Assembly (NCBI GenBank): GCA_937625935.1
Contig: OW569365.1
Location: 310,001 to 374,000 of the forward strand
Source: Tetramitus jugosus
Lineage: Eukaryota > Protista > Heterolobosea
Direction: 5' to 3'
DNA: 64,000 bases
Within the stretch, counting starts at the first letter, position 1, and each line of letters begins with the position of its first letter. A program made the translations under genes and the position numbers. The notes below the pieces were generated by a model. That model searched no databases and was not told the DNA's origin. It saw only the letters and a list, made by a program, of their open reading frames with translations. Below are positions 626-44,456 of the stretch, one piece after another.

Positions 626-744
626 TGGATTTATTTTTGCGAACGCCTTACAATTATACATCATCTCTGGTGGGACAACTCGAGCAAAATTGCCATTGGG
701 CGCGGGTATTTCGTTCCAATCTATAAACACCTTCCATTCACTAT

Positions 745-2340
745 TTATTCTTCTTTGGTTTCTTCTGCAACCTTTGTTAATCTGTAAAAGTTTGCTGTTG
801 CCCGGTTTGCTGCAAAAGGAACCTTTCCAACGCATTCAACCTTCCATGGACACTGAATGAGAAGTGATTCGATACCTTCCATAGGCAGAACTGATACAAT
901 CAACCATTGACCGGTGGTTGGCTTTAGCACTCTCCAGACTTCCATTTCCATGTCAGGCAAATCGATTTCACCAGTCTCCGATGTTAAAATATTGTCCAAA
1001 CATGCCTTATCAACAACAACATCAAAGGTATTGTCCTCAAAATCGTCACCCATTTCTCTGACATCAACATGCTTAAAATCAAGCAAGTTCAAACTTTGTT
1101 TCTTATCTTCGGTGAGTGAATTGATCAAATCTTTTTGCTGTCTCAAAATCGTCTTGTACACTTGCTGCATATGAATGATGGCGAATCGTGAGATATCAAT
1201 CTGAGTCATTCGTTGTGAAAAATTGTTCGTGAGCAGCTCGACACCAAGAGACGACATGCCGCATCCCATAATCAGTGCATTGTTAAACGGAACATCATTA
1301 TTATCCGTCTTCACCTGATCAAACAAATGCTTCAATGCATTGTAGTCACAGTACCATTCATCAATGGATCCCTCCTGCGTATAATACTTGTTCCAATATT
1401 TTTCGACTGGGGAATCAGGCTCTCCCATCTCTTCCAATTGCTTGTACTTTTCGATATCGGATTTCGTTCTCGGTGGCAATGAATGATTGCCCAATTGCAT
1501 GGCATTGAATCTGTGAATGGCATGTTCCGCTCTCTGGAAAAAGGACACAATCTGTGCTTGATCCTCAACATTTGCACTCTCCAAGAATTGTCTCTTGGCC
1601 TCTCTTCGCATTGCCAATTGTTCCGATGCAGACAAGAGTGGTGCGTCTTCATTCTTGCCCTCTACGATACGGCCTCTGTCCAACCTCTTTCCAGAAATGA
1701 GTTTCAAGATGATACGGTACAATGTAAACGTATAAATCGAGTTCCTCTCGTCAATGGTCATCTCTGCAATCTCCTTCTTGAATACTGGGCTATAGGATTG
1801 ATCAGCACTGTTGAACATTTCATCTTGTTGCTTCTTTCTCAGCTTTTCCTTCTCTTCCTTGCTGTAATAGCTCTTGGGAACGGCTTGAATTGCACCCTTT
1901 GTCAACTCGCGTGCAAAATTCAAAATATCGGAATCAGTGGTACGACCAACAGAGGATGGATCATCTCTGTGTAGCTTGTCCTTGAACGAACGGAGGAAAT
2001 TGGACTCTAATTGATGTTTGACCATTTGTCTCTCACGTGGTGTCATGAGATTGATGGGCTTTGCGGCGAGTGAAGGAGGAATGGCACCACTAATGATTGC
2101 TTCTTTGATAAAGTTGGTAGGTCCATTGTTGGTTGGTTGTTGTGGTGATGCTGAGGCAGTTGTTGGTCTCACAAAAGCAGTTCCCTTCTTGGTTCCACTG
2201 CTGGATGGTGTCTTCTTCTTTGTCAGACAGACATGGTTGTGAAAACTGTGAACAGTCGTCCAGTGACGTGATGTTGCAGTTGTGTTGGATCGAATCAGTG
2301 GTGCAGGATTCCTTCTGAGAAGAAGAGAGAGGGAAGACAT
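745..2340 (-). CDS. SAM-dependent methyltransferase (EEF1AKMT4/METTL13-like C-terminal domain) with a long N-terminal extension and a probable mitochondrial presequence
   Basis: Motifs YWNKYY..DEWY, IMGCGMSSLG, QIDIS, FDVVVDKACLD and VWRVLKP. The N-terminus is Arg/Ser/Leu-rich with no acidic residues. Confidence 0.75.
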   Translation of the reverse strand: MSSLSLLLRRNPAPLIRSNTTATSRHWTTVHSFHNHVCLTKKKTPSSSGTKKGTAFVRPTTASASPQQPTNNGPTNFIKEAIISGAIPPSLAAKPINLMTPRERQMVKHQLESNFLRSFKDKLHRDDPSSVGRTTDSDILNFARELTKGAIQAVPKSYYSKEEKEKLRKKQQDEMFNSADQSYSPVFKKEIAEMTIDERNSIYTFTLYRIILKLISGKRLDRGRIVEGKNEDAPLLSASEQLAMRREAKRQFLESANVEDQAQIVSFFQRAEHAIHRFNAMQLGNHSLPPRTKSDIEKYKQLEEMGEPDSPVEKYWNKYYTQEGSIDEWYCDYNALKHLFDQVKTDNNDVPFNNALIMGCGMSSLGVELLTNNFSQRMTQIDISRFAIIHMQQVYKTILRQQKDLINSLTEDKKQSLNLLDFKHVDVREMGDDFEDNTFDVVVDKACLDNILTSETGEIDLPDMEMEVWRVLKPTTGQWLIVSVLPMEGIESLLIQCPWKVECVGKVPFAANRATANFYRLTKVAEETKEE

Positions 2341-2429
2341 CGTTTCTTTGGCGCTTTGATTTTGTTTGTTTGTGATGAAAGAAAATGCTTCTAGAAAAAG
2401 AACAAGATTAAAATTGATAATTCATTCAT

Positions 2430-3140
2430 TTAGAACTTCAATGCGTGTGGGTAGACACCGTTGGACAAGGAGAAGTGTTGGGACAGATATTCCTTCAAGA
2501 ATTGAACCTTTTCGACAGCAGCGATGATTTGAGCATCAACACCTTGTTGCAATTGAACAAACTCTTGTGGCAATTCCTTCTTTTGTCCGTCCTTGAAGAA
2601 GTTGGTCTCAGTCTTATCGTTGCTAGACTTGGACTTCTTCCACAAAGCGTCGTTGACCTTGGAAACATCAACTGCGGAAACGTCAACCTTGGTGGAGGTG
2701 GCAATAACGTAAGCTTGGTTAACTCTCTTCAATGGAACACCATTGACCTTGTATGGGCCAGTGACCAACAACAAGCCAGAGTCCAATTGCTTCAAGAAGA
2801 CAACTCTCTTTCCAGCAAATCTACCAGCCAACAAGATCAAGACGGTACCAGGTGTGATGGTTGCTCTGAGTCTAGTTTGAGCGTGCTTCTTACCTCCAGT
2901 CTTTTGTGCAACAGAGTTTCTGGTGGAGAACTTCTTTTGGATAGTTCTGGTTTGGTTCTTCTTACCGAAGGACTTGGTCTTTGGTTGTTCAGCAACAGCT
3001 GCAGCCTTTGCAACAGGCTTAGCGTTAGCCTTGATCAAAGCCCAGACACCTCTTCTGTGGTATTGTTGAGCAGAGGAGAAACGTGGGACAGAAGGAGAAA
3101 GAGCTGAAGCAGCTTGTGGGTTCTTGTAAGTCTTGACCAT
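2430..3140 (-). CDS. RPL6: 60S ribosomal protein L6 (eL6)
   Basis: LRATITPGTVLILLAGRFAGKRVVFLKQLDSGLLLVTGPYKVNGVPLKRVNQAYVIATSTK and C-terminal FSLSNGVYPHALKF. Start set at ATG 3140 (MVKTYKN). Confidence 0.97.
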   Translation of the reverse strand: MVKTYKNPQAASALSPSVPRFSSAQQYHRRGVWALIKANAKPVAKAAAVAEQPKTKSFGKKNQTRTIQKKFSTRNSVAQKTGGKKHAQTRLRATITPGTVLILLAGRFAGKRVVFLKQLDSGLLLVTGPYKVNGVPLKRVNQAYVIATSTKVDVSAVDVSKVNDALWKKSKSSNDKTETNFFKDGQKKELPQEFVQLQQGVDAQIIAAVEKVQFLKEYLSQHFSLSNGVYPHALKF

Positions 3141-3342
3141 TTTGTCTGTGAATGTATATGTTTTGGCAGAAACGACGTGTGTTTGTTTTTTCAGATTTTT
3201 TGGTGTTGAAGTTATTTTTCTCAAGTTGACTCATTGTTCAACAAGAGCTTCAATTTCATCGATGAAGTTTCAAAAACACCGAAATGCTTAAAAAATGAAA
3301 AATGATTATTGCGAAAATCGAGTGGAAAAGCAAATTATTGCT

Positions 3343-5028
3343 TTATGTTCTGACTGAGTCTTCATCGACATCCACATCATCGTCATCTTCGTCGCCGCTG
3401 TTGTTTGGTTGGTCAACATCTTGGACCATTTCATTCCAAATCTCATCTTCTACTTCGTCATCCTCTCCAACGTACTCTTCCATTTGCATTCGTATGACTT
3501 GCACCAGTATGATTGTGCCAATAGTCAATGAGATTAAGCACACAATACCTGCTATGATAATACTGTTCAGTGATAATTTTCCAATCTTCCACCAGGGTTT
3601 TCTTGTTGGTGGTTGATCATCACTGTCGCTTCTTGATGGACTGGGATCAGGAATGATGATAATCTCTTGGTCCGTTGTTCCCAATAATTCTAGCGTGATA
3701 CTCAATGGTGCATCTTCAATGTCGAGAGTTGAGGCTCTTTTTGGAGATATTCTCCAATCTCCCTTTGCTTGCTCACCCCAAAATTGAAGCGTTCTTGCTT
3801 GATTGTTGGTCGTGGTGATTTCAAACTCTTTGTTGCTTGGAGCATGAACGCTGAGAGTCACGAAAGCATCACTAGAGTTGAGTGAGATGCGAATCTGTTC
3901 GATATAGATTGATTGGTGCATTTGAAATGATACTGTGTTGTCATGATTGGTGCGAATACTCTTCACTTTTGTTTGCTTGTTGCTGATGAGTGGATTGTGA
4001 CTCGACCGCCATGATTGAGCTAATTTCAATGCTTGCTTCATATTGATCTTGCCAAAGCCATGGCATTCATTCCACAGAATGTTTCCTGTTTCTGTTGATG
4101 ATGAATCCCCCAACGATGTTGAATGAATCAATATATATCTGATATCTCGTGCTGTCAACTCAGGATTCACCTGTAGTAGTGTAGCGACAAGAGTTGATCC
4201 GACAATTGCTGCTTCAGCATCATCCGTAGCATCGACTACAGCCAGAATGTCTGTTCGATGGGAACATGACTCAGACGATCCAATGTTTAACACGTGTGCA
4301 CTGTTGATATGAGAGAATGAAGCAGGACAAATATGAATCGAACCTAGAGAATTGCGACCTTGATGATGCTCCTTCTCAATGAGTGATTCCAGTTGTTCTC
4401 TGTCATCGTCATTCATATTTCTTTCTCTCAACAAGTGAACATAAATGTCCGCTTTTGTCTCATACGGTCTTGATAAAGCTACAGTGTCAATATCATCGTG
4501 TTGCGCAAGTCTAATGATGGATTGTGTTGTAGTTACTGTTGCTGTTGCTGTTGCAAGTGTTGCTGACAAATTATGCAATGATTTTCTTACAATCTCTCGT
4601 GTTAACTGCGGCTTCGTTTGTTCGCTACCATCTGTGACGCTAGCGATCGTAATGGCTGGTTTCGATTGATCGAATTGACATTGGTCTTCATTCTTTACCA
4701 TATGATCTCGATTGTCATCGTCATTGTTCTTTGTCTTTGGTCCAATCATTGAATGTTCACATATCATTTTGGCGCGATTATCAAACAGTGTGATGATTGT
4801 TGGTATTGTTGTTGTTGTTAACGTATTGTCATCACCATGGTTAACGTTGACCATCAAATTGGACACAATATTTGTGTTTACAGAGTTCATGTGAGCTGAT
4901 GATGGATGATCGGTTGCAGCAGCTGCTGAACACATGGCACCACTAGAGAACATTAAGCATGAAATAGTCATGAATAGAATGATTAATAATTGCAGTCGAT
5001 TGTGTTTGAGAAGACCAGAACTTAACAT
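3343..5028 (-). CDS. Kexin/furin-like (S8B) type I membrane protein with a degenerate catalytic domain, P-domain, TM helix and acidic tail
   Basis: Signal-like LLIILFMTISCLMFSSG, then QGRNSLGSIHI, NPELTARDIRYIL, HGFGKIN..ALKLAQSW, FWGEQAKGDWRI and TM IIIAGIVCLISLTIGTIILVQVI. The start codon is uncertain (ATG 5028 chosen). Confidence 0.75.
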   Translation of the reverse strand: MLSSGLLKHNRLQLLIILFMTISCLMFSSGAMCSAAAATDHPSSAHMNSVNTNIVSNLMVNVNHGDDNTLTTTTIPTIITLFDNRAKMICEHSMIGPKTKNNDDDNRDHMVKNEDQCQFDQSKPAITIASVTDGSEQTKPQLTREIVRKSLHNLSATLATATATVTTTQSIIRLAQHDDIDTVALSRPYETKADIYVHLLRERNMNDDDREQLESLIEKEHHQGRNSLGSIHICPASFSHINSAHVLNIGSSESCSHRTDILAVVDATDDAEAAIVGSTLVATLLQVNPELTARDIRYILIHSTSLGDSSSTETGNILWNECHGFGKINMKQALKLAQSWRSSHNPLISNKQTKVKSIRTNHDNTVSFQMHQSIYIEQIRISLNSSDAFVTLSVHAPSNKEFEITTTNNQARTLQFWGEQAKGDWRISPKRASTLDIEDAPLSITLELLGTTDQEIIIIPDPSPSRSDSDDQPPTRKPWWKIGKLSLNSIIIAGIVCLISLTIGTIILVQVIRMQMEEYVGEDDEVEDEIWNEMVQDVDQPNNSGDEDDDDVDVDEDSVRT

Positions 5029-5273
5029 TGTGCGCCACAAGTGAGCAATGTACTGTGCGTGTTGTTGAATGTCACATGAGATTGAAACCATGATGGAGAT
5101 TGTGATGGGTGAGCAGAGATGAATATGCTCGATCGTGGTGAATAGATCAGCATCTACACCAATATGTTGGTGTTGTAGCATATAAGATTGACAGAGGAGA
5201 GAAAAATTGTGTTGATATGGAATCAATTTATCGCTTAGGATTCTCCTTGCGAAGCGGCTAACAAGAGTGGGCT

Positions 5274-8200
5274 ATGGGCAACAGCTACTTTTTTGCCCAT
5301 GAAGCAGGAGAAATAGATGAATTCCAGGAGGGAAATCAGGACAACGAACATGCCAAGTTATCGACAGCTCCGAAAAACACAAATTTGATTCTGAACAAGC
5401 AGTTGGTGATGAGCGAGCAAAAACCAAATTTTAATGTCAATGACGACTCAAAAGCTTTGCTTGACAATGTCATTGATTGGCTCGGAATCACTAGGAATCG
5501 ATTTCCTTCCCAAGAGATCTTGTACGATGAAGTAGAACATCTGTTTATCACGAGCAATAACAAGAAGAAGACTACTTCATTGACTCTCTATTCCCCTCAG
5601 TTTATCAAGAAACATATCTGTGAGAGATCATTAATTGTGTTTGCCCATGTTTTTGAAGCCAATAAGCTCTATGTGAATTCACAACCGGATGATCCATGGC
5701 CCACAGCAGCTTGCATGTTCATGCATCACATGGATCGATACTTGAGTCAAGTAAATGTCAATAACGTGATGAAGAATGAAGAGGTTGATGACTTGTATAG
5801 TGATGAGGATGATGAAGTTCTTGACGAGCAACACAGTGGAGATACTACTCCATTGGTGCTGGATCATCACTATATCTTATCACATTTCAATCATTTTGAT
5901 CGAACAGATAACGAGAGTGATGAGAATAGCGATGAATATCCATGTGTCCACTTACAGAATCTGTGGAAGTTATTGGCTGAGGAGGTGTGGTGGAGATTAT
6001 TCATATTTAATGATTGGAATGCGTTCTCTCATGTACCATCTCAAGAAGAGATGAAGAAAAAAGTAGAGAGCAATAACCAAGCAAAAGTTCAGTTTAAACC
6101 AGATGCTACAGAAAAGACGAAGAGACGGATGAAACATAATGACGATCCCTATTTATTTATTAATTATTATGATCTTGAGCTTCGATCACGAGAGGCACCA
6201 TTTAAGATGTCCAAGCAGGCACACGAGTTTATTCGCTACCTAATCTGGGGATACCATTATGGTATGACCAGTGACTTGTGGGATGAGCCATTGAGTAACC
6301 TGGAAACAGTGAAGCATGTTGTACTCATTGATATGGACAATGTCGGGAAAGCAATTACGGAGCTCGCAACTAAGAACTTTTCATATCCAGATACTGTGTT
6401 CTTTATCGTTGCAGGGCCTTCCTTCAATCCAACGAGATCAATATCAAAGTTACTCGACACAATACCTGAAAGATTGAGATATATTCAAATCTTGTTTGAT
6501 AAATCTGAGTTGAGTGATGCGAGAAGTATGAATGGCTTTGAGCAATATTTGTTCAAGTTTTACGAGAGTGGTTATTTTACTCCATACAGAGACGCGGCGG
6601 ACTATTGCCTTTGTGGCATCGCAGGTATTCTTCATCGAAGACTTCCATTACATGTTAATCTATGGATTCTGAGTAGGGATGACGGACTGAAACACCCTGT
6701 GAGACACATACACATGAGAGGTCGACCGTCATTCATAATTAATCAAAAAGATTTGTTATCAGTGTTTGACGAGTATCTACTTGATCATGATGAGTTGGAG
6801 AGAAAATTGCATGAGAGAATCGATACGATGGTGTCAGATTGGAGTTCGTTAGATGTAGTAGAAAGAGAATCGTTAGAGGTCAATATAGACAATTCAATCG
6901 AACTCAGCGAGTACAGCCAACAGGAGATAGACAAGGTTTTTTTGAGCTCTGGTGGTATTGACTTTGATAGACGCCGATATGAGGAGGAAATGGGCTCATG
7001 TGTTGCTGATTATATTCAAAAGCACAGGAATAAGTTCGCGATTTTGCAACAATTAAGAGTTAAAGGTCGTAGAATTGGTTATAAGGGCTGGATGGAGATA
7101 TGTAAGGAGATTCCTTTCTTCATAGACAAAAATATGCTGTTCGAAATAGACCTGAGGGGGGGAAGAATCGGCGATGAAGGGATAGAAGAATTATGTCGTG
7201 TATTGCAGGGTAACCGTAGCGTATATTTTCTGGATTTGGGTGCTTGTTTTTGCGCCGATAGAGGAGCGATTGCCCTTGCTAGTTTTGTAAAGCAAAGTGA
7301 TTCTCTACAAATTCTAGACTTAAGGTGGAACAAGATTGGACGAGTTGGAGCAACGGCACTAGCAGAAGCATTGGTGGAGAATAACTCGTTAGTTATTTTG
7401 AATATGAGAGTAAATCAACCAACACTGAGTGGAGCTAGTGCAATATTACACACGATACTGCAGAAGAAGGATTGTTGTGTGTCTGGAGTAGATCTGCGAG
7501 AATGCAAGGCAGACTTTGGTTCTACCTTCAGTGAGATATTAAAGGAGAGAAAGGAAGAAGGAAGCTCTGATCAAGTGAACCGAGCATTATCCGTTGATCT
7601 ATGTGGAAATGGGTTGAATTCCAATAGTGCCGCTTCCATTTCAGGAATCCTATCATCGTTCAATTATTTGAACTCCTGGTATATTACTCGTTTTATGTTG
7701 GATTACAACAACATTGGTTCACTTGGACTTCAGTATCTAAGTAAGGCATTATGCACAAACGAAACTCTTGTCGTTCTTACACTAGCTCGTAACGGAATAG
7801 ATAGTGCAGGTGCAGTGGCATTAGCTGAAGCTCTCCGTCATAATACTACGTTGACTCATATAGATATACACAAGAATCCAATTGGTAATATCGGTGTGTA
7901 TGCACTGGCTGATGTGTTAGCTGGCCAAAATCAAACCCTCGCCTATCTGAACCTAAAGTTCACAGATTGCACAGATTTTGGAGCAGTTGCCTTGTCAAGA
8001 GCAATTCGAAAGAACGATTCTCTCACATTTCTTGATTTATCAAAGAATAACATTGGTACAGTAGGTGGTGTGTCATTGGGTCGTGCTCTAGAGAACAACA
8101 TGACTCTCAATAGACTGATCCTCGACGAGAATAATGTTGGGGACTCCGCTTTCAGAGTGCTCTCGAGAAATTTCGGAAATCAAAGCTCATATCATGTTCG

Positions 8201-18827: not shown

Positions 18828-21468
18828 ATGAGTGACCAAGCAACAAACAATGTAAGATTCAATCTATAGCTTCACTGTTGAACGCTATCAAATTTGATGT
18901 ATTGATTCTTTATACTCACTCTTTTTCCTCCACTTTTTTGTATTTTTTTTGTTCGGATTGACCTTTTTTTTTGTATGATCATACACCAATGGACGAATGA
19001 AATGATTCTAGATGGGCATTTTCCAAGAGGAACCAACAAGTGTTGTACCACTTGATGGCAATATTGTCAACATGGTGGTTGATGACTCATCCTATGAGCA
19101 CAGCGACAACAACAACAACAACAAAACGATTGCAACAACTTTGGAACTTGTCAACAACAACAATCATATCGAAACAATTAGTGATGAGGATAACAATACC
19201 AACAGCAACAATAATAACGGATTAGATGATGATTGCAGTACCATCAATGTCGTGTTTGGAGAAGATCAAGAGATTTTGATTCAAGAGGAACATGACGCAG
19301 AAGAGCTGTTGAAGCATCAGGATGACCTTGTCGATGGTGATGCACTGGTGAATGAGGATGAATTGACTCAGATCACAGATGATAATAGTCAAGCATCACC
19401 TGTTGGTATGAAATCCACTTCATCACCACTATCACAGCAACAACCAACCAAGAAATTGCCCATCAAAGATCAATTGATGCGATTGAATGAGTTGTTGGAG
19501 AAGGCTGCTACATACACTGCTTTTCTGATTGAAGATGGACTGATGACTGAACAAGAGGCCATTCAAAAATCAAAACACAATGTCCAAAATGACAGTGTAG
19601 ACGAGGACGAAGATGACGAAGATGAAGATGACCAAAACAATGGAAAACAAAGAACAACAAGAGGAGGAAGAGTGGCAAACAGCAATGGAAAACGAACAAG
19701 AAGCAGTGCTGCATCGTCATCGTCATCGTCATCCGCATCGTCATCATCCAATGCAAAGAAACCAAAGACCCTAAAGTTTGTTCAACCAAGAATGATGAGT
19801 GCAGGTGGTGAAATGAGACACTATCAACTCGTTGGTATGAACTGGCTCGTCTCTCTGTACGAGAATGGAGTGAGTGGTATTTTGGCTGATGAGATGGGTC
19901 TCGGTAAAACCATTCAAACCATCTCATTGATCTGTCACTTGTTTGAGAAGGGAATCAAGGGACCATTTATCATTGTTGCTCCATTGTCGACTCTATCCAA
20001 TTGGAGGAACGAGTTGAGCAAGTGGGCACCTGGTTTGAACATTCTGCAGTATCATGGTAACAAGAATGATCGAGCTCGACTCAGAAATGTTGAACTGCCA
20101 AAGATGCTACAGAAACCGCACCCTTCTCTCCACGTGTTGATCACTAGTTATGAAATGAGCATCAGGGATGCTCGTTTCCTGCGTAGAATACCGTTCAAGT
20201 ACTTGGTGGTGGACGAAGCGCATCGTCTGAAGAATTTCCACTGCAAGTTGACAAAAGAACTGAAACAGTATCAAACAGAGAACCGTTTGTTGTTGACTGG
20301 TACTCCCTTGCAGAATAATTTGACCGAGTTGTGGAGCTTGTTGAACTTTTTAATGCCCGATCTGTTTGATGATTTGGAAAATTTTAGGAAATGGTTCGAC
20401 GTGACTGACAATTCAGATACATCATTGACAGAAGAACGCACAAAGCTCATTAATAAGCTACACACCATTTTGAGACCATTTATACTGAGAAGATTGAAAA
20501 CAGATGTCGAGTTGGATCTTCCAACCAAGAAAGAATATCTCTTGTTTTCGCCAATGGAACCCATCCAGAAAGAGTTTTATGAAGCTGTGTTGAAGCGTGA
20601 TTTAACACCCATTCTCGAGAAGCAAAATGGTACTGTGAATGATAATCAAGGTTCAACACGTCTCCTGAACATTATTATGCAACTAAGAAAGGTTTGCAAC
20701 CATCCATATCTGCTGTCAGAATTTTCTGCGAAAGACAATGAGTCAATAGAGAAGCAGAATAAGAGGTTTTTGAAAGAGGTAGTGCAACAGAGTGGAAAGT
20801 TCAGACTTATGCACAGAATGCTCACGAAACTCAAAGAGAGAGGTCACAAGGTACTCATCTTTTCTCTAATGACGAGAATGCTCGATGTTATGGAGGACTA
20901 TTTAGAGGCTGATGGTGTTCAATATTGTCGATTGGATGGTAGTGTGTCACAAATAGACAGAGAAAACCGAATCAAACAGTTTAATGAGGATCCAGATATC
21001 ACATGTTTCTTGCTCTCTACAAGAGCTGGTGGATTGGGTATCAATTTAACTTCTGCAGATACAGTTATTATTTATGACTCTGATTGGAATCCACAGATTG
21101 ATTTACAAGCTCAGGACAGATGTCATAGAATCGGACAAACGAAGCCTGTTCGTGTATTCCGTCTCTTGACTACAGACAGTGTCGAGAAGCGAATATGGCA
21201 AACTGCTCAGAGAAAACTGCAGTTGGAAAAGTTGATCATCCATAAAGGAAATTTCAAGGGTGCTGCCTCAACGGGAGACAAAATCACTTTAACAGCCGCC
21301 AATCTTCTCGAGATTCTCAACGGAGGAACAAATGACGAAAAAGAACACAAATCAGGAGTGTCAAATGAAGACTTGGAGTTATTGCTCGATCGTCAAAGAG
21401 AAGATCTGACCACAGGATCTGGATATGAAGTAGTGGACTACCAAAAAGACAATTTTATGACCACTTAA
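18828..21468 (+). CDS. HELLS: SNF2-family chromatin remodeller of the HELLS/LSH/DDM1 subfamily; exons 18828-18851 and 19012-21468
   Basis: RLNELLEKAATYTAFL, GILADEMGLGKT, VVDEAHRLKN, LLTGTPLQNNL, MQLRKVCNHPYL, QAQDRCHRIGQ and KLQLEKLIIHKGNF. No HAND/SANT/SLIDE or chromo domains. Phase-0 intron 18852-19011. Confidence 0.85.
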
Positions 21469-23925: not shown

Positions 23926-24326
23926 TGGATGTAGGAGGAGGATTATGAAAGCTTTTTGTTGTGTTATCGTTATTGGGAATAACAAGTGTTTGGGTGTTTT
24001 TGCCAGAGTATTGTAGTACATTAGAATTGGCATTAATAGCGTGCAGAGTTTAAAATCGAGTATCAAGCTACATCGTATCTTTAGGTAATCCTTTGTGTCC
24101 AGGTAACACTTGAGCTCATGTGCCATAAACATCATGTGACAGTCCAAAGTTAGGTCTCCAAGCAATCGGAGCTTCCATTCAAAAAAGAAAACAATGGTTC
24201 CGAGTAATTCCAACACCTATTTAGGAGACTTCTTTCGTTTGTCCCATTTGTAGTCGCGGCCAATTTTTACTCTTTGATTTCCGCTTTCCGCTCCCCTGAA
24301 CACCGGCAAGGCAAAATAGTAAAAAC

Positions 24327-24411
24327 AGGACATAGTGTGAATCGAACACACGACCATAGGATGATGTTGCATTATTTGCAATCCCATGCTCTACCGCTGA
24401 GCTATATGTCC
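24327..24411 (-). tRNA. tRNA-Cys(GCA) with a 13-nt intron at the canonical 37/38 position
   Basis: Acceptor stem GGACATA/TATGTCC, D arm TAGCTCAGCGGTAGAGC, anticodon arm TGGGA-TTGCAA[ATAATGCAACATC]A-TCCTA, T arm GTGTG-TTCGATT-CACAC. Confidence 0.93.
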
Positions 24412-24635
24412 TTGATATTCATTGTCAAAAATATTGCGCTTTTAGCCTCATCTATCCGCGTCCACGTCATTTGTCCAAAAATAAAAATGTTCTAAATATC
24501 CGATCTCCTAAAAGCGCGAGTTGTCTTTTCACTTACAACTTTCCCATCAAAACACACACAGAACAAAGCTATCATTTCAAATTGGTCATCATCACACTGT
24601 GTGTAATGTCCATATCATTTTAATAATCAATCATC

Positions 24636-34466: not shown

Positions 34467-34540
34467 GCGGGTTTGGCGCAGCTGGTAGTCGCGTAGGTCT
34501 CATAATCCTAAGGTCGTGAGTTCGATCCTCACAACCCGCA
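34467..34540 (+). tRNA. Elongator tRNA-Met(CAT)
   Basis: Acceptor GCGGGTT/AACCCGC, anticodon arm TAGGT-CTCATAA-TCCTA, T arm GTGAG-TTCGATC-CTCAC. G1-C72 and TTC in the T loop indicate the elongator rather than the initiator. Confidence 0.92.
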
Positions 34541-37781: not shown

Positions 37782-40700
37782 CTAAACATCGATGGTGCAA
37801 ACAGGGATACTGGATTGGTTGGTTTGCAATCGAATGGTTACAATTTCACTCTTTTCCTCCGGTCTCATGTAGTTGGTGAAGAATGAACACAGAACGGTTG
37901 TTCCTCCAGTCAATGATTGCTGATGATTGGCATAGTAGTTTGTGGTCACCTTGAACTGACCGTGAGGAGCTTTTCGGAGCATGTATTCCTCTGGGCCATA
38001 TCCTCGAGTGAAATCTCTGCTTACGTAGCCTCCAATCTTTGTTCGAGGATAGGCATAGTAGCAATGTTCACCTCCGACGCAATCCTCATGAACATGAAGA
38101 TCAATGTCAATATCATTGACATCCCAGGCCATACTGATCCTCAAGTCGAGATCCATCTTGTATCGGAAGCCTTCATGACATGGCTTCAAGTCAGGGTTCT
38201 TTAGTAAGCAGTGATTCAATTCGATAGCAGCAGTTTGCTCAATCTCGTCAAATCTCAAGTCCCATTTACCTGTGATCACCTTGTTGAACAATTCGACAGC
38301 TTCCTCGAACTTACCCAACTTTTCCTTGACCAATGCAAGGTCACGATAACTCTGTGGCTCCTCAGGATTCATCTTCTTCACCTTCTCGAACACCATTTCA
38401 GCCAATTCGTACTGCTTTGCCTGATCAAGACGATAGCCCACAATTCTGAACAATTGGGCATTCTCCAGTTCCAGTTCAAGAATGTTGGTCAAAATGGCAA
38501 CACCATCACTTAAATTCTTGAGCTTCATGAGCCAGAAGTCGGCAACATCCAAGAAGAAGGCTGGAGAGCTGCCTAAATTCTTTCTCTCCTGCAGGTAGGC
38601 CTGATAAGGATTGCTTGCCTTGCTAATAGTAGCCATGTACGCTGCATCGGATTTCCATTCTTGAATCTTGATAGATGCAGTAACTGCGTTGGAAGGCTCC
38701 TCTTGATTCATTATCTCATCTTCGGAGTCGCTCATGAGCAAACTTTCCTGTCTGAGGGCTGATGAGCTCGGCACTCTCTCGCATTCTCTGGACGAGCTAG
38801 ATGAAAGAGATCTAGACATCTGTGGTGCAGCCATACATCTGGATCTGACAGATAACGATGGGCTAGCCATGGATAAGAGCGATCGTCTTGAATCAGAAAC
38901 AGGAGCCTCAGACATCATCTTGGAGCACTCCTTGTCCACCTCTTCCTTTGGAGCCTTGAATTCAGTTTGATGCCATCTCTTTCTATCCTCCCATAGTGCC
39001 AGGACTTTTTGAATCTTGTCTGCCACTCTCTTCTTCTCATCGTCTTCTTTCTTTTGAACAAAGTTCTGATAGGATTCTCTGACCGATTTCAAGCTTGCGG
39101 GAGGCATGATTTGATGTTTGATGTATTGATCCAAAGTTTCCAACACAATCAAAGAGGTCGTTGGAGTGACAATGGACCACTCTCTACCCAAGTCTTTCAA
39201 CTCCTTCTCAAACAAGTGTGGGAACACAGAAAGGGAGTTCATCTTTTGTTTGGCCCAGAGCATTGGAATAATTCTATCAGATTTTTCTTGGGCTGTTGAT
39301 GCTGTCGTTGCAGAAGGCTCAATGTCATAAACTCTAGTGTCGATAATATCACCGCCGTATCGGAAGGCAATTGAAATTTGACCTCCTTGCTTTACCTTTC
39401 CATACAAGTGGAAGTGACCACTAGGCTCCAAGATGGTTGGCTCATTTGGATAGACTTCTTCAAACTCTTCTGTCTCATAATCGGCAACCAAAAAGTACAA
39501 TACTGGCTTTCCAACTTGCTCCACAATTTGTTCTACACGGAGCTTGTTCGCATTCAACAACATTCCGCCACTCTTTGTTGCCACATGGGAAAGCAATTGA
39601 TGGTTGGCTGACATACTCGTTGATATAATGTACAATGGAATAGAGTAAGTCGTGTAAGGTGTTGTTTCTTGACCAATGGTATGAATACCGTCAGTAAAAA
39701 CAAGACAGAATGACGCAGATTCATCCAACTCAGACTCGAGCAAGGACAGATTGGTAGCGCCATCGTAATCAACCTTCTTGACATGGTCCAACAATGACTG
39801 AACATTGTCGAAGGTAGCACGGCTTCGCTCCTGTACTGAATTACAGAATGGAGTAAAAACAACTTGTTTTGGCTTCAATTCTTTCATGATAGCACTCAAA
39901 AGTTCATAATCTTTCTCAACTATCTTAGTGTTGCGACTACGGCTGTAGGAGCAATCCCAAAGAACTTGAATCTTATCGGTTTTCATTCTGCTATCGCTAG
40001 TTGGTTTCTCAACTTTGATACGAGCACAAAAGTAGTTGTCTTCTGTAATGACACAATTGTCTTCTAGTGTTTGACTACAACGAATAGTGAGATTGTCCAC
40101 GGATTCATCCAATTGAGAACTTTCAATCATTGCAGTCATGTACTTGTCAGTAGATTGACGAGGCTGACTATTCTCAGTTAATTTACGATCAGAATTCAAC
40201 AGAAGCTCCAATGATTGCTCACTATGTGAATCACTGTACCACTCGACATTGGCCTGCACAGTACTGTTCTTTCCTGGCAATCCAAATGGGATCATAACCT
40301 CCGAACAAGGCACATCTGCAACGGCAGACGTAGAGACAGGCATCGTGTACACCACTCGAATCACCTTTGGCTTTTGTGGCACCAAAGGATACACGCGGGT
40401 TCTAAAACTATTGCTCTGATGAGTAGCCATCTCTACAATGGCAGCGCCCTTGCCTCTCTCTCTCACCTCCTGCTCGAAAATCATCTTGGCCTTCTCTTTT
40501 TCAACAGGAACAGCATCAATGAGCTCTGTGGTGCTTCCATCCACATTCATGGCATAAGCAATGAGAGTAGCATCGTCAGGCAATGGAAAAACTAGTTCAC
40601 CCTCCAATGTTCTATCGTGAGGATTGACAAAGGTGAAGACGGAAGTGATTTTAGCAATGGGTAAGTTGACTTGAACTTGAACATCAAGGGATTGGACTTC

Positions 40701-40973
40701 CAGTGGAGAACTTGCTTGATCAGAGAAGGTAATCTGAGGAAGGTTGTTTCTCTGACTCTTGACATCTTCTGTTTTTGATGTTTCTTGTTCAACAACACTT
40801 GTTGTTGTCGTAGTTGTTGGTTGAGTTTCTGTAGGAGAAACTTCCTTTTCTCCTACTTGAGCTGGTTGTTCCGCTGGCTGGTCGTTGACATCGGTGGTAC
40901 TATTGGTGGCTTGAAAGTCAGAAAGATCCTTGGAGGCGTCAGAAGCTCTTAATCGACTAAATGCTGAGAACAT
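37782..40973 (-). CDS. VIT + vWA-like + TPR + DUF2135 (YfaP-like) multidomain protein
   Basis: VIT FVNPHDRTLEGELVFPLP; vWA-like LWDCSYS..YDGAT..VFTDG; IVTPTTSLIVLE; TPR PEEPQSYRDLA; DUF2135 WDVNDIDIDLHV..DFTRGYGPEEY. Confidence 0.85.
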   Translation of the reverse strand: MFSAFSRLRASDASKDLSDFQATNSTTDVNDQPAEQPAQVGEKEVSPTETQPTTTTTTSVVEQETSKTEDVKSQRNNLPQITFSDQASSPLEVQSLDVQVQVNLPIAKITSVFTFVNPHDRTLEGELVFPLPDDATLIAYAMNVDGSTTELIDAVPVEKEKAKMIFEQEVRERGKGAAIVEMATHQSNSFRTRVYPLVPQKPKVIRVVYTMPVSTSAVADVPCSEVMIPFGLPGKNSTVQANVEWYSDSHSEQSLELLLNSDRKLTENSQPRQSTDKYMTAMIESSQLDESVDNLTIRCSQTLEDNCVITEDNYFCARIKVEKPTSDSRMKTDKIQVLWDCSYSRSRNTKIVEKDYELLSAIMKELKPKQVVFTPFCNSVQERSRATFDNVQSLLDHVKKVDYDGATNLSLLESELDESASFCLVFTDGIHTIGQETTPYTTYSIPLYIISTSMSANHQLLSHVATKSGGMLLNANKLRVEQIVEQVGKPVLYFLVADYETEEFEEVYPNEPTILEPSGHFHLYGKVKQGGQISIAFRYGGDIIDTRVYDIEPSATTASTAQEKSDRIIPMLWAKQKMNSLSVFPHLFEKELKDLGREWSIVTPTTSLIVLETLDQYIKHQIMPPASLKSVRESYQNFVQKKEDDEKKRVADKIQKVLALWEDRKRWHQTEFKAPKEEVDKECSKMMSEAPVSDSRRSLLSMASPSLSVRSRCMAAPQMSRSLSSSSSRECERVPSSSALRQESLLMSDSEDEIMNQEEPSNAVTASIKIQEWKSDAAYMATISKASNPYQAYLQERKNLGSSPAFFLDVADFWLMKLKNLSDGVAILTNILELELENAQLFRIVGYRLDQAKQYELAEMVFEKVKKMNPEEPQSYRDLALVKEKLGKFEEAVELFNKVITGKWDLRFDEIEQTAAIELNHCLLKNPDLKPCHEGFRYKMDLDLRISMAWDVNDIDIDLHVHEDCVGGEHCYYAYPRTKIGGYVSRDFTRGYGPEEYMLRKAPHGQFKVTTNYYANHQQSLTGGTTVLCSFFTNYMRPEEKSEIVTIRLQTNQSSIPVCTIDV

Positions 40974-41108
40974 GATTTGTTATGGTAATGGTTTTGTTTT
41001 GTTGTGACACAAAGTGAAAGCAGACGAAATCAAATCTGGCTCGATTGAAAAATCAAAACAAATCCTTGGAACATTGGCGGAGAGATGGAGTTCTTCCCCT
41101 CAGTGTTC

Positions 41109-41386
41109 TTTTTTTCAATCTTTCCGTTCTTGAGTGAAGAGGCGTCGCATCACCTCCCCACATCTCCTCTTTGTCGACAAATTGTTGGGCCTTCTCACTC
41201 TTCTTCTCTATCCCACTCAGTCCTTTGACTTGTTTCAATACCCAACATACCAAGCATGTACTCCTTGCTTGGTTTCCTCCGCTTATTGACTAGTAATGCG
41301 CCGTTGATTGTTTAACCGCATGGCTACTCTTTGGTCTTTGTGAAGACCCATTTTACTCAGCTGGAGGGCAGCCCAGAAAATTTCAG
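41109..41386 (-). mobile_element. Degenerate relic of the ORF2 C-terminus of an older, related non-LTR retroelement
   Basis: Frameshifted pieces LSKMGLHKDQ, KEYMLGMLGIET, KAQQFVD and KRRCGEVMRRLFT match the ORF2 C-terminus at 42860-43170 (LSSMGLHKSQ, KDYLIGMLGVET, KAKWFVD, KRRCVEVMHRLFT). Boundaries are approximate. Confidence 0.85.
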
Positions 41387-41401
41387 TAAATTATTAATTG
41401 C
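41387..41401. repeat. Target-site duplication of the ORF1-only element (left copy; right copy at 44341-44355)
   Basis: Exact 15-bp direct repeat TAAATTATTAATTGC (16 bp with the next T) abutting the poly(T) run. Confidence 0.9.
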
Positions 41402-42714
41402 TTTTTTTTTTTTGTTCCATACAACCAAGTGTGCGTAAGCACACGATTGCTCATTTATTGACTTGTTTTGTGAGTGACGACCCGTAGGGCGTCGCTCACT
41501 CTTCTTCTCTTGTTGTCCCCGACGGTGCACCTACAGGTTGGAAGAATCACTCTGGTGAGTGTTTTGGTTGATGCCCTTCATCAAAGAGCGTAACCTTGTA
41601 GTAGGACCGTCGATGGACACAGAGCCATCTGTTGTTTTTTTCTTGCCTTGGGCCTTGTTGCTCCTCAGATCACCCAGTGTGATCCTAGCACTCCTTTTCT
41701 TGTTGTCATTGAGCTGTGGACTTTGAATCTCCTTTTCGGAGTCGTCGTCCACATCCACAATGACTGGTTCGTCCTCAGTCAAACCATACCTTTTGCGTGC
41801 AGCAGCCAAAGCCAATGCAGCAATTTCCTTTCTCGCTCTAGCTAAAACTGGAGAAGTGGCATTCACTTGCTCCAGGATTTGCCGGTTTTCCACACTGAGC
41901 TGTACAACAGGCACTGATGGCAGTGGTGTTGCACTCCTTTGTACTTCTGCTCCCACTGACTCTGGAGTAGTCTCCATGCTTGCAGTAGCTTGGGCATCTT
42001 GTTCCGGTATTGGAACCGGTTTGTTGCCCACTTGACTCTTTTTCTTTCCCAGTTCCTTGGTGAGTTCTGTGACCTGTCGACGCAGTGCGTCAACCACCGT
42101 CAGCAGCTCCTCGTACATCTTCGTCAACCTCTTGTTGACTGCCTTGAGAGGATCATGTGGTCTCTCGACGTATCGAGTGACCGTGGCCTTGACCTTTTGC
42201 TCTCCGCTGAGCACTGCTTGTGCATAGGTTTCATCACCCATGACCACGAAAGCAGTGTCACGCTTCTTGAGCACACTGGCAACCTTCTCAGGTCCCAGTA
42301 GCTTCTTGATGTCGTCCACTGACATGTTCTTCATGCCATGGACGACCACCTTTCTTGTGCAATCAACACTGCGCTTGGGTGCAGCAGTGCTGTTGCCAAT
42401 CCTCCTCTCTTTGTTGAACAAATCAACAAAGTCATAGATGCGGTCACCCTTGACCGTCACCCATGCAACAAAGCGTTGCTGGCCTTTCCTCTTGATGACT
42501 TGGACTCGGTTGAGCCAGTCACCAAACTCCTCTCCAATCTTCCTTGCCAATGATGACTGAGAGACACCATTACCGTTGCCGGTAATGACGACCTCTCTGT
42601 CACTTGGCCTAGAGCCTTTCCGTGCAGTGGTCCACACTGCATAACGGCTGTTGCCGTATTCCTTCACCAAATTTGTTGAATCACCAGACATGTGATTTCG
42701 TTTTTTCTGGCCTT
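41402..42714 (-). mobile_element. ORF1-only, non-autonomous poly(A) retroelement
   Basis: On the minus strand: a short leader, a 386-aa ORF, a 3' UTR with two hairpins and AATAAA, an A12 tail (41402-41413), and a flanking TSD. Confidence 0.85.
41531..42691 (-). CDS. Retrotransposon ORF1-like basic protein (RRM-like repeats, coiled coil, disordered tail)
   Basis: Intact and intronless. RRM-like VVVHGM..SVDDIKKLL..TAFVVM and coiled coil LTKMYEELLTVVDALRRQVTELTKEL. It lies inside the poly(A)/TSD unit. Confidence 0.7.
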   Translation of the reverse strand: MSGDSTNLVKEYGNSRYAVWTTARKGSRPSDREVVITGNGNGVSQSSLARKIGEEFGDWLNRVQVIKRKGQQRFVAWVTVKGDRIYDFVDLFNKERRIGNSTAAPKRSVDCTRKVVVHGMKNMSVDDIKKLLGPEKVASVLKKRDTAFVVMGDETYAQAVLSGEQKVKATVTRYVERPHDPLKAVNKRLTKMYEELLTVVDALRRQVTELTKELGKKKSQVGNKPVPIPEQDAQATASMETTPESVGAEVQRSATPLPSVPVVQLSVENRQILEQVNATSPVLARARKEIAALALAAARKRYGLTEDEPVIVDVDDDSEKEIQSPQLNDNKKRSARITLGDLRSNKAQGKKKTTDGSVSIDGPTTRLRSLMKGINQNTHQSDSSNL

Positions 42715-42717
42715 TAA
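42702..42717. repeat. Target-site duplication of the RT-bearing element (left copy; right copy at 44328-44343)
   Basis: Exact 16-bp direct repeat TTTTTCTGGCCTTTAA abutting the T18 run. Confidence 0.88.
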
Positions 42718-44327
42718 TTTTTTTTTTTTTTTTTTAATACAACCAGTGGTTGCGCTATTTATTCTGTGTTTCTTCTCTTTACACGAGGTAACTAGTATGA
42801 TTGTGACGGCAGAATGCCGTCACTATTAAAGAATTTTTGTTGCAGATGCTCGCAGAGCATCAGCAACCAGCCATGTTCTTAGAGCTAGTGAAGAGGCGAT
42901 GCATCACCTCCACGCATCTCCTCTTGGTGTTGTCCACAAACCATTTAGCTTTCTGCTTGGCTACCTCCTTCTTGATTCCACTCTTCTTGAGTCCTTTGGC
43001 CACTTGCTTCACAGCTTGGGTTTCCACCCCTAACATTCCTATCAAGTAGTCTTTACCTGACTTTCTCTGCTCGTTCATTGTTCGTCTTCCATTGCACCAT
43101 TGCTGGTTATCAAACCAAATATCAACACATTGCGACTTATGCAGACCCATGGAGCTTAACCTTTTTGCAACCTCCTTTGAGAGCAAAATTCTAGCCATTC
43201 TGGCAACTGGGCAATTCACAAGGCAATGCAGGACCGTCTCTTGCTCAAAATTGCACTTGGGACAAGCCGTGTCCATATCTTCCACTCCATAGAGATGCTT
43301 CACCACGACTCTTGTGTGAAGTGTTTGGCTTTTGACTTGGGCAATGAACCACTCAAGCTTCCGATCGACCCTAAAGGGCATTTCATAAAGGAGAAGTCTG
43401 TTGCACCACCCAAACATGCCTTCTGAATCCACCATAATTTCTCACGACCGATCATCTCTCGATAATGCCGAGTGAAAGCATGCCAGATCTGCTGTTTGTC
43501 AACCACTTCAAAATCGTCCTTGTACATCAAAATTGGCATGGATGCAGCACAACGGCCATGTGTGACATTGCATTTTAGGAGTTCGAGGTCCGCGAGAATG
43601 TATCCGTATCTCTTCGCACTGATGCCAAAGTTACCGTGCGCCCTCACCAGCTCGCTATGCTTGACCCATTTTCCATTTCTTGTCAGCTGCTCCTTTAAGC
43701 TGATACCAATCTTAAAAAACTTCTTTGTCACATCGTTTGGCTGCGACATGGCAAGGTTACAGCCTAAATAATTGACCTCATCTCCATATGCGATAGTCAA
43801 ATTGTTGTTGTGCATGCGTTCCGCACACCACTTGAGGTATGAGTGTTTGACGAGCTCCAGCCTGTTGTTGGACTGAAAGACATTCTCCCTTTGGAATGTT
43901 TGCAGAAGCTTGATCTCCTCAAGCGAGTCCAACATCAGCTTGTGAGCTTCGTTGTCATTCTTTCCTCTCAGCATGTCCTTAACGAACCATGCAGTTCTTA
44001 CAAGAATGGACTCCTCAATCTTTCGTAGTCCAAACCCACCGTTGTCACTGGAAACCTGTAGCAAATCGGATGGGTACCTCTTCATTGCCACTGATCCTTG
44101 TTTTATGAGCGCCTTGCCCATTTGATTGACTCTATTGATCCACGCTTTAGTCCAGTGAGTGAATTCACAGGCGTAAAGGAACACCGGGTGGATGCAGGTG
44201 TTAACAATTCTAGCCACTTGTCTCCCTGTGAGCCTCATGATGCCTAGGCGGTTCGTCACTCTCTTCACCTTTTCGAGTGCCTGCTCCTTTTGTCTTGTCG
44301 TACAACCGTTCAGGCTCGTGAAGAGCC
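42718..44327 (-). mobile_element. 5'-truncated non-LTR retrotransposon (L1/Tx1-like ORF2 3' part), with one frameshift near 43440
   Basis: Starts at about the end of the RT core (LFTSLNG). It has IVNTCIHPVFLY, NGGFGL, the zinc knuckle CPKC..ETVLHCLVNCP, a stop at 42860, 3' hairpins, AATAAA, an A18 tail (42718-42735) and a TSD. Confidence 0.9.
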
Positions 44328-44355
44328 TTTTTCTGGCCTTTAAATTATTAATTGC
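44328..44355. repeat. Overlapping right-hand copies of both TSDs
   Basis: TTTTTCTGGCCTTTAA (44328-44343) and TAAATTATTAATTGC (44341-44355) overlap by TAA. Confidence 0.88.
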
Positions 44356-44384
44356 TCTAAAAACTCTGTCTTTTTATAGTATGA

Positions 44385-44456
44385 GGGACAATGGTCTAGT
44401 GGTATGATTCTCGCTTTGGGTGCGAGAGGCCCGGAGTTCGATTCTCCGTTGTCCCC
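44385..44456 (+). tRNA. tRNA-Pro(TGG)
   Basis: Acceptor GGGACAA/TTGTCCC, TGGTCTAGTGGTATGATT, anticodon arm CTCGC-TTTGGGT-GCGAG, T arm CGGAG-TTCGATT-CTCCG, then a T4 run. Confidence 0.96.

What the first reader, a model, noticed from the sequence alone, without database searches (positions are those of the whole stretch)
41109..44456. tRNA-targeted non-LTR retrotransposon landing pad: three stacked insertions upstream of tRNA-Pro
Seen: three retroelement pieces lie on the minus strand with their 5' ends facing the tRNA-Pro start at 44385. Two exact, nested TSDs give the order of events. The oldest is the relic at 41109-41386. Next came the ORF1 element (TSD TAAATTATTAATTGC, 5' junction 45 bp upstream of the tRNA). 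Last came the RT element (TSD TTTTTCTGGCCTTTAA, junction about 58 bp upstream), which duplicated the ORF1 element's own 5' end. Known: Dictyostelium TRE5 elements insert about 50 bp upstream of tRNA genes in this same orientation through an ORF1-TFIIIB interaction. Inference: the same safe-haven strategy operates here in what appears to be an unrelated, discobid-like compact genome, reusing one site repeatedly over time. That would be either convergent evolution or a much wider distribution of this targeting than described.
Basis: partly seen in the sequence, partly recalled or inferred. Interest (0 to 1): 0.9.

Follow-up and report, generated by a model that had tools for sequence, protein, structure and literature searches.

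The report
Stacked tRNA-targeted LINE insertions in amoeba
Three jumping-gene (LINE-type) insertions are piled up head-to-head in front of one tRNA-Pro gene of a heterolobosean amoeba. They belong to families that land with near base-pair precision about 44 or 57 bases upstream of tRNA and 5S RNA genes, the 'safe harbour' habit so far described only for Dictyostelium slime moulds.

Summary
Two exact, nested target-site duplications (15-16 bp and 16 bp) flank two poly(A) retroelements on the minus strand upstream of tRNA-Pro(UGG). A decayed third fragment lies beyond them.

Order of events: relic (family C, 77-83% identical to its kin), then a 1.3-kb ORF1-only element (family A, 5' junction at -44), then a 5'-truncated RT element (family B, 99% identical to a full-length 5.1-kb copy, 5' junction at -57). 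The relic's place is inferred from position and decay, not from a duplication.

Genome-wide, all 29 other family A copies examined sit at Pol III genes or behind another stacked element, always head-to-head:
- 20 have TSD-defined junctions 40-46 bp upstream of tRNA genes of at least 14 kinds.
- 2 lie 38 and 40 bp upstream of 5S rRNA genes.
- RT-bearing families use a second register (5' junction 52-57, near nick about -40).

Family A is non-autonomous but coding: 28 of 30 ORFs are intact and dN/dS is about 0.26. Its protein is predicted as tandem RRMs plus a coiled coil.

The host groups with Naegleria, Willaertia and Acrasis. The geometry matches Dictyostelium TRE5. Kinship with TRE5 could not be tested, and tethering to the Pol III machinery is inferred.

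The scan had already reported this family on other pieces of the same genome. No publication on it was found.

The parts
41134..41386 (-). Relic: a 5'- and 3'-truncated fragment of the C-terminal ORF2 region of a third LINE family (C). It has several internal deletions and no 3' UTR or poly(A).
   Evidence: It is 77-83% identical to family C copies elsewhere in the genome. The alignment shows deletions of 5-17 bp and loss of homology beyond 41134.
41387..41402 (.). TSD1, distal copy (TAAATTATTAATTGC, plus an ambiguous T).
   Evidence: Exact repeat of 44341-44356; followed directly by the T-run of the ORF1 element's poly(A).
41403..42714 (-). Family A element, 1.3 kb, ORF1-only and non-autonomous. 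Layout: poly(A) 41403-41414, 3' UTR with hairpins up to 41530, ORF1 41531-42691 (386 aa), 5' UTR of about 23 nt whose last 13 nt lie inside TSD2.
   Evidence: At least 38 full-length copies at 91-97% identity. Each copy examined has its own TSD. The ORF is intact in 28 of 30 copies and dN/dS is 0.26. The predicted fold is tandem RRM plus coiled coil.
42702..42717 (.). TSD2, distal copy (TTTTTCTGGCCTTTAA): the 5' end of the family A element plus the first 3 nt of TSD1.
   Evidence: Exact repeat of 44328-44343.
42718..44327 (-). Family B element, 5'-truncated. It corresponds to nt 3496-5111 of the 5.1-kb full-length element: the end of the RT domain, the zinc-finger region, the 3' UTR and the poly(A) at 42718-42736. 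A frameshift lies near 43375.
   Evidence: 99.1% identical to the full-length copy L061:3032-8143(-). The ORF pieces are 43300-44268 and 42860-43435, with a zf-RVT hit. Homology ends at 44327.
44328..44343 (.). TSD2, proximal copy. The 5' junction of family B is 57 bp, and the near nick 41 bp, upstream of tRNA nt 1.
44341..44356 (.). TSD1, proximal copy. The 5' junction of family A is 44 bp, and the near nick 28-29 bp, upstream of tRNA nt 1.
   Evidence: the same register as 20 other family A copies
44385..44456 (+). tRNA-Pro(UGG), the targeted Pol III gene.
   Evidence: ARAGORN; Rfam tRNA, 58.5 bits

Best explanation
The locus is a stack of three successive target-primed reverse-transcription insertions. 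All come from one superfamily of APE-type LINE retrotransposons that home on RNA polymerase III genes in a heterolobosean amoeba.

Shown:
- Each insertion is head-to-head with the tRNA.
- Each new element lands between the tRNA and its predecessor, so older elements are pushed outwards.
- The order is relic (family C), then the ORF1-only family A element, then the 5'-truncated family B element.
- Position is set relative to the Pol III gene, not by local sequence.
- Family A nicks the tRNA-sense strand about 29 bp upstream and the other strand about 44 bp upstream. RT-bearing families B and C nick at about 40 and about 56.
- Family A encodes only a tandem-RRM, coiled-coil ORF1 protein that is under purifying selection.

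Inferred:
- Family A borrows the endonuclease and reverse transcriptase of autonomous relatives, which share its 3'-terminal stem-loop and GGTTGTAT motif.
- The ribonucleoprotein is positioned by contact with the Pol III pre-initiation complex (TFIIIB or TFIIIC) bound at tRNA and 5S genes, as is known for Dictyostelium TRE5-A.
For: - Nested exact TSDs and poly(A) tails at the window locus.
- Age order: family B piece 99.1% identical to a full-length copy, family A copy at most 97.1% to its nearest copy, relic 77-83% with deletions.
- Full-length family B element: 5.1 kb, ORF1 of 372 aa, ORF2 of 1317 aa in the -1 frame with APE, RT and zinc-finger domains, its own TSD, 56-57 bp upstream of an intron-bearing tRNA-Glu.
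- Family A: 29 of 29 further copies lie at Pol III genes or in stacks. 20 TSD-defined 5' junctions fall at 40-46 bp (median 43.5). The near TSD end lies at 25-30 bp (median 29). TSDs are 12-19 bp and unrelated in sequence. At least 14 different tRNA kinds are involved.
- Two family A copies lie 38 and 40 bp upstream of 5S rRNA genes.
- RT-bearing copies, 5'-truncated ones included: junctions at 52-57 bp, near TSD end at 36-44 bp, n=7.
- An independent metagenome contig shows a family A element about 45 bp upstream of tRNA-Asn.
- ORF1 is intact in 28 of 30 copies, copies at different loci are identical, and dN/dS is 0.26.
- Tandem-RRM fold.
- 3' hairpins are shared between families.
Against: - No direct evidence for any protein contact; the host TFIIIB genes could not be fetched.
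- Positions -28 to -26 are almost always A or T in family A targets, so some local sequence preference of the endonuclease cannot be excluded.
- One family A copy (L007) lies only about 7 bp from its tRNA.
- The relic has no TSD, so its place in the order is inferred.
- Two of the three tRNA genes in this window carry no insertion, so occupancy is far from complete.
- No autonomous partner with the family A 3' UTR was found among the loci held.
Confidence: 0.8

Rival explanations
1. The endonuclease recognises a short DNA motif that happens to lie at a fixed distance upstream of Pol III genes, for example an A/T-rich TATA-like box at about -28 to -25. On this view it does not recognise the bound transcription factors.
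For: 19-20 of 20 family A targets have A or T at -28 and -26, and 18 of 20 at -27, immediately beside the nick at -29.
Against: - The rest of the target and the TSDs show no consensus.
- Families B and C nick about 11 bp further out, yet equally precisely.
- 5S genes are hit at their own offset.
- In the window, family B nicked inside a previous element's end and TSD, so it measured from the tRNA and not from native upstream DNA.
- An A/T trinucleotide is far too common to explain exclusive Pol III association.
Confidence: 0.1
2. The family shares ancestry with, or was horizontally exchanged with, the dictyostelid TRE5 or NLTR-B elements. The targeting would then be inherited rather than convergent.
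For: - Same architecture (ORF1, ORF2 in the -1 frame, APE-RT-ZF), same orientation, same offsets for tRNA (40-54) and 5S (37-41) as listed in PMC5911963.
- One dictyostelid LINE (Polysphondylium violaceum, RNase H-bearing) appears among the top 30 hits of the exhaustive search.
Against: - That hit is only 26% identical, no closer than arthropod, nematode, fish and algal LINEs.
- It has an RNase H domain, which this family lacks.
- The RT scores higher against R2 than against human L1 ORF2p in the PDB (79.7 against 48.5 bits), whereas TRE5 is listed under L1 (PMC5911963).
- ORF1 has no homologue outside this organism's own elements.
Confidence: 0.12
3. Insertion is random. Only copies in harmless positions near tRNA genes survive selection, or the copies spread by duplication of tRNA-plus-element units.
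For: The genome is gene-dense, so selection against insertions inside genes must be strong.
Against: - A 7-bp window and a fixed orientation cannot result from survival alone. Taking 1602 tRNA candidates as an upper bound in 26.35 Mb, the chance per copy is about 2e-4, yet 20 of 29 copies fit.
- Copies that are 100% identical already sit at different tRNA kinds with different TSDs and flanks.
Confidence: 0.02

Closest known systems
Dictyostelium discoideum TRE5-A (and TRE5-B/C), tRNA-gene-targeted non-LTR retrotransposons
   Same: - Head-to-head insertion in a narrow window about 40-54 bp upstream of tRNA genes, and about 37-41 bp upstream of 5S genes.
- TSDs of about 12-19 bp and a poly(A) tail.
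- ORF1 plus an ORF2 (APE-RT-ZF) in the -1 frame.
- Abundant ORF2-less derivatives.
- Repeated use of one site.
Sources: PMC5911963 and PMC5006619.
   Different: - The host is a heterolobosean (Discoba), not an amoebozoan.
- The 5' UTR is only about 23-27 nt, and no modular A/B/C UTRs were seen.
- ORF1 is a predicted tandem-RRM protein, whereas TRE ORF1 proteins are described as lacking similarity to other proteins.
- The RT shows no special similarity to L1-type RTs.
- Two discrete registers are used by different families.
Polysphondylium pallidum NLTR-B
   Same: A non-LTR element unrelated to the TREs that independently shows TRE5-like insertion 39-64 bp upstream of tRNA genes (PMC5006619).
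   Different: NLTR-B carries an RNase H domain in place of the zinc finger and has three ORFs. It is known from only 3 copies and from a dictyostelid host.
HAL1 ('half-L1') elements of mammals (from my own knowledge, not checked in a paper here)
   Same: A non-autonomous LINE derivative that keeps only a selected ORF1 and is presumably mobilised in trans.
   Different: HAL1 elements derive from L1 and are not site-specific. Family A here is targeted to Pol III genes, and its ORF1 is only 38% identical to that of the one complete autonomous element recovered here (family B).
Yeast Ty3 and dictyostelid DGLT-A
   Same: They use Pol III genes as safe harbours through the Pol III initiation machinery.
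   Different: They are LTR elements that use an integrase, insert about 2-30 bp upstream, and work by a different mechanism.

Membership tests
TRE5 (dictyostelid tRNA-gene-targeted LINEs) | Insertion about 40-54 bp upstream of the tRNA coding region, in the opposite transcriptional orientation | tested here: met
   Family A junctions at 40-46 bp (n=20). Families B and C at 52-57 bp (n=7). All are head-to-head.
TRE5 (dictyostelid tRNA-gene-targeted LINEs) | Also targets 5S rRNA genes, about 37-41 bp upstream | tested here: met
   L022 and L023: 5' junctions 40 and 38 bp upstream of 5S genes.
TRE5 (dictyostelid tRNA-gene-targeted LINEs) | ORF1 plus an ORF2 with APE, RT and zinc-finger domains, ORF2 in the -1 frame | tested here: met
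   L061: ORF1 at 7001-8119(-), ORF2 at 3180-7133(-), offset 986 nt = -1 frame. Pfam Exo_endo_phos and RVT_1. zf-RVT on the window piece.
TRE5 (dictyostelid tRNA-gene-targeted LINEs) | RT groups with dictyostelid TRE elements (listed under L1) | tested here: inconclusive
   No TRE sequence could be obtained. The nearest database RTs are 24-34% identical and mostly from metazoans. In the PDB, R2 scores above L1.
TRE5 (dictyostelid tRNA-gene-targeted LINEs) | [quoted passage not shown] | tested here: not met
   The host SNF2 gene sits in the heterolobosean clade at SH-aLRT 99.
TRE5 (dictyostelid tRNA-gene-targeted LINEs) | ORF1 protein binds TFIIIB subunits | not testable with these tools
No complex prediction was run.
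APE-type non-LTR (LINE) retrotransposon | Poly(A) 3' end, variable 5' truncation, TSDs, APE and RT domains | tested here: met
ORF1-only non-autonomous LINE derivative (HAL1-like) | Complete TSD-flanked units that encode ORF1 but no ORF2, with ORF1 under purifying selection | tested here: met
   At least 38 units span the full 1.3 kb. The units examined have their own TSDs. 28 of 30 ORFs are intact and dN/dS is 0.26.

The most novel reading that the evidence does not exclude
Pol III-gene homing arose independently in Discoba, in a LINE lineage unrelated to TRE5.

The two registers (near nick at -29 or at -40) differ by about one helical turn. This would reflect different contacts of family-specific ORF1 or ORF2 proteins with the same face of the TFIIIB-DNA complex.

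The 5' UTR is only about 23-27 nt long, and every new copy lands at a fixed distance from the tRNA's A/T-rich box. The target site may therefore also supply the element's promoter ('promoter capture'). If so, only the tRNA-proximal member of a stack stays transcribed, and each new insertion silences its predecessor.
Probability: 0.3. Interest if true: 0.8.

Novelty: new variant of a known kind. Interest (0 to 1): 0.68.

Why it matters
tRNA-gene homing by non-LTR elements has been described only in dictyostelid amoebae, and the field's own survey calls TRE targeting unique to them (PMC5006619). A base-pair-precise copy of that behaviour, 5S offset included, in a heterolobosean would matter in three ways:
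- It would be a strong case of convergent evolution under the pressure of a compact genome.
- It would give a second, independent system in which to ask which feature of the Pol III pre-initiation complex a LINE ribonucleoprotein reads.
- It would offer natural material (two registers, and an ORF1-only parasite of the system) for separating the roles of ORF1 and ORF2 in target choice.

For annotation, the stacks mark Pol III genes and explain much of the repeat content of this genome.

Tried and rejected
- **Reads on the locus.** The aim was to look for empty-site alleles or transcripts in other samples.
- **Metagenome scan for related ORF2 loci.** It gave one 1.1-kb contig without context.
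- **ORF1 profile search.** It found only this organism's own families in metagenomes. One such contig did show the tRNA junction; another did not.
- **Census of all tRNA genes in the genome.** It scored only 63 of about 1600 candidates, so the occupancy of all tRNA genes could not be computed.
- **Further loci from the genome.** Host TFIIIB genes and more full-length elements were therefore out of reach, and no complex prediction was attempted.
- **RT clade assignment.** No labelled reference sequences (TRE5, Tx1, L1 and others) could be obtained by reference, so no clade tree was built.
- **Protein Atlas look-up of ORF1.** It gave only a weak RRM lead (score 0.76).
- **Pfam on ORF1.** No significant domain; the only match was a far sub-threshold ATG16 hit (E = 0.087).
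- **Partner for family A.** No ORF2-bearing element with the family A 3' UTR was found in the loci held.
Full report
**1. What is at the locus**

ARAGORN and Rfam place a tRNA-Pro(UGG) gene at 44385-44456 (+). Upstream of it, reading the plus strand, the order is as follows:
- a decayed fragment, about 41134-41386;
- TSD1, 41387-41402;
- a T-run and 1.3 kb of antisense element sequence holding a 386-aa ORF at 41531-42691(-);
- TSD2, 42702-42717;
- a T-run and 1.6 kb of antisense RT-element sequence, up to 44327;
- TSD2 again, 44328-44343;
- the remainder of TSD1, up to 44356;
- 28 bp of spacer before the tRNA.

TSD2 is made of the last 13 nt of the 1.3-kb element's 5' end plus the first 3 nt of TSD1. 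The RT element therefore inserted after the 1.3-kb element, into the junction that element had created.

**2. The pieces are members of real, mobile families**

*Family A (the 1.3-kb unit).* It has at least 38 full-length copies at 91-97% identity in the 26.35-Mb genome. Every copy I examined ends in poly(A) and has its own, unrelated 12-19 bp TSD. It is therefore a complete element that encodes ORF1 only.
- 28 of 30 copies keep an intact ORF of 382-388 aa.
- Several copies at different loci are 100% identical.
- Pairwise dN/dS has a median of 0.26.
The protein has therefore been under selection while the family spread.

*The ORF1 protein.* AlphaFold on a 10-row alignment of ORF1 lineages gives two beta-alpha-beta domains (pLDDT about 80-88), then a 40-residue helix and disordered tails. 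Foldseek matches tandem-RRM proteins and the RRM-RRM-coiled-coil DBHS proteins, with E values down to 2e-6. Pfam finds no domain by sequence.

*Family B (the RT piece).* It is 99.1% identical to nt 3496-5111 of a full-length element held as L061:3032-8143(-). That element is 5.1 kb long and has:
- ORF1 of 372 aa, 38% identical to the family A ORF1;
- an overlapping ORF2 of 1317 aa in the -1 frame, with APE and RT domains;
- its own 17-21 bp TSD;
- a position 56-57 bp upstream of an intron-bearing tRNA-Glu.
Homology of the window piece to this copy stops at 44327. The window piece also carries a frameshift near 43375.

*Family C (the relic).* It matches the ORF2 3' region of a third family at 77-83% identity. 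It has five internal deletions and lacks the 3' UTR and poly(A). Its rank as the oldest insertion follows from its position and decay, not from a TSD.

The ORF2 fragments in the loci I hold range from 35% to 100% identity to family B. This is a diverse superfamily.

**3. Targeting**

Of 29 further family A copies:
- 21 have a tRNA gene head-to-head next to the 5' end, and 20 of these gave a TSD-defined junction;
- 1 has a partial tRNA;
- 2 have a 5S rRNA gene;
- 5 are separated from the Pol III gene by the poly(A) end of another stacked element.

For the 20 TSD-defined copies, the 5' junction lies 40-46 bp (median 43.5) upstream of tRNA nt 1. The tRNA-proximal end of the TSD lies 25-30 bp (median 29) upstream. 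This is where the tRNA-sense strand must have been nicked to prime reverse transcription. At least 14 tRNA kinds are involved. The window's family A copy (44 and 28-29) fits exactly.

At the two 5S genes the junctions are 38 and 40 bp upstream.

RT-bearing elements, 5'-truncated ones included, use a second register: junction at 52-57 bp and near TSD end at 36-44 bp (n=7). The window's family B piece (57 and 41) and the full-length copy fit this. The two registers differ by about one helical turn.

In the window, family B nicked inside TSD1 and inside the family A 5' end. Position is therefore measured from the tRNA gene, not read from native upstream DNA.

I took 1602 tRNA candidates as an upper bound. 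A random insertion would then hit a 7-bp window in the right orientation with probability of about 2e-4, against 20 of 29 observed.

An independent metagenome contig shows a family A element about 45 bp upstream of a tRNA-Asn, in a flank different from the genome's own tRNA-Asn copy.

In this window the other two tRNA genes (24326-24412 and 34467-34540) carry no element sequence.

**4. Mechanism**

Shown: poly(A) tails, TSDs, 5' truncation and APE plus RT domains. Together these indicate target-primed reverse transcription, with fixed orientation and registers.

Inferred:
- The ribonucleoprotein is positioned by the Pol III pre-initiation complex, because the only thing common to the targets is a tRNA or 5S gene at a fixed distance.
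- Family A is mobilised in trans. All families end in a terminal stem-loop followed by GGTTGTAT and the A-tail, although their 3' UTRs otherwise differ. This would let a foreign RT recognise family A RNA.
- No ORF2-bearing partner with the family A 3' UTR was among my loci.

A caveat: positions -28 to -26 are nearly always A or T in family A targets. This may be the tRNA genes' own TATA-like element, or it may be a local preference of the endonuclease. The data cannot separate the two.

One family A copy (L007) lies only about 7 bp from its tRNA and is unexplained.

**5. Host**

A SNF2 (HELLS/DDM1-like) gene in the window (19012-21468) has Willaertia, Naegleria and Acrasis as its best named hits, at 51-56% identity. 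In a quick maximum-likelihood tree it sits inside that heterolobosean clade at SH-aLRT 99. This is a single gene and a quick search, and no amoebozoan sequence was in the set. The organism also turns up in groundwater, soil and hot-spring metagenomes.

**6. Comparison with what is known**

The review PMC5911963 lists TRE5 at 40-54 bp upstream of tRNA genes and 37-41 bp upstream of 5S genes. It is in opposite orientation, has an APE-RT-ZF ORF2 reached by a -1 frameshift, and its ORF1 binds TFIIIB. All the geometric and architectural features are met here.

PMC5006619 states that TRE targeting is unique to dictyostelids. It also shows that NLTR-B acquired the same habit independently.

Three full-text searches found no paper describing such elements in Heterolobosea or Naegleria.

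Sequence kinship with TRE5 could not be tested directly. What the searches show:
- The nearest RTs in a word-indexed search and in an exhaustive HMMER search are 24-34% identical. The named ones are mostly from arthropods, a nematode, a fish and an alga.
- One RNase H-bearing Polysphondylium violaceum element, at 26% identity, is among them.
- Against solved structures, the RT scores 79.7 bits with R2 and 48.5 bits with human L1 ORF2p.
- ORF1 has no homologue outside this organism's own elements.

I therefore file this as working like TRE5 but not as a member of TRE5.

**7. Earlier notes of this scan**

The same family was already reported on other pieces of this genome, including the 5S targeting and the ORF1-only forms. 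I re-derived those points independently. New for this locus are the nested order of events, the two family-specific registers and the selection test on ORF1.

**8. Limits**

Noticed in passing
L007 (G000:C24:418945-423257), family A copy at 1501-2813(-), tRNA-Thr at 2834: One family A copy has its 5' end only about 7 bp from the tRNA start, not about 44 bp. No clear TSD was found. It could be a later deletion or an aberrant insertion.
   Followed up: partly
L061:8200-8296; window 24326-24412: Several nuclear tRNA genes are long (87-97 nt) and appear to carry introns. Examples are the tRNA-Glu(UUC) targeted by the full-length element and the 87-nt tRNA-Ala in the window.
   Followed up: no
G000 contigs C54 and C56: The two contigs show tRNA genes at identical coordinates (941, 12773, 14364, 14438, 44585). 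They look like duplicate records of one tRNA-dense molecule, perhaps the mitochondrial genome.
   Followed up: no
window 40973-41134: The start codon of the 1063-aa VIT/DUF2135-domain gene (37782-40973, minus strand) lies only about 160 bp from where the relic's homology breaks off. The relic's 3' UTR and poly(A) seem to have been replaced by this gene's upstream region.
   Followed up: no
window 41416-41530(-) and 42737-42862(-); 3' ends in L002-L061: All element families end in a terminal stem-loop plus GGTTGTAT before the A-tail, and they carry a strong mid-UTR hairpin. Folding z-scores are -2.1 and -3.5. This is a candidate RT recognition signal.
   Followed up: partly
L065 (ENA ERZ9422687, NODE_32173), 125-245: An environmental metagenome contig holds a family A element about 45 bp upstream of tRNA-Asn(GUU). 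Its flank differs from that of the genome's own tRNA-Asn copy (L009).
   Followed up: partly
L067 (Polysphondylium violaceum AJWJ01000821.1), 16-6719: A dictyostelid LINE with a 503-aa ORF1 and a 1656-aa ORF2 (RT plus RNase H), probably NLTR-like. It is among the 30 nearest RTs at 26% identity. The contig ends 15 nt before ORF1, so its target site is unknown.
   Followed up: partly
L018/L036 (G000:C52:230890-236017): A stack in the opposite order to the window's. A family B fragment lies distal and a family A copy lies proximal to tRNA-Arg(UCU), with a second tRNA (Val) about 2.4 kb away.
   Followed up: partly
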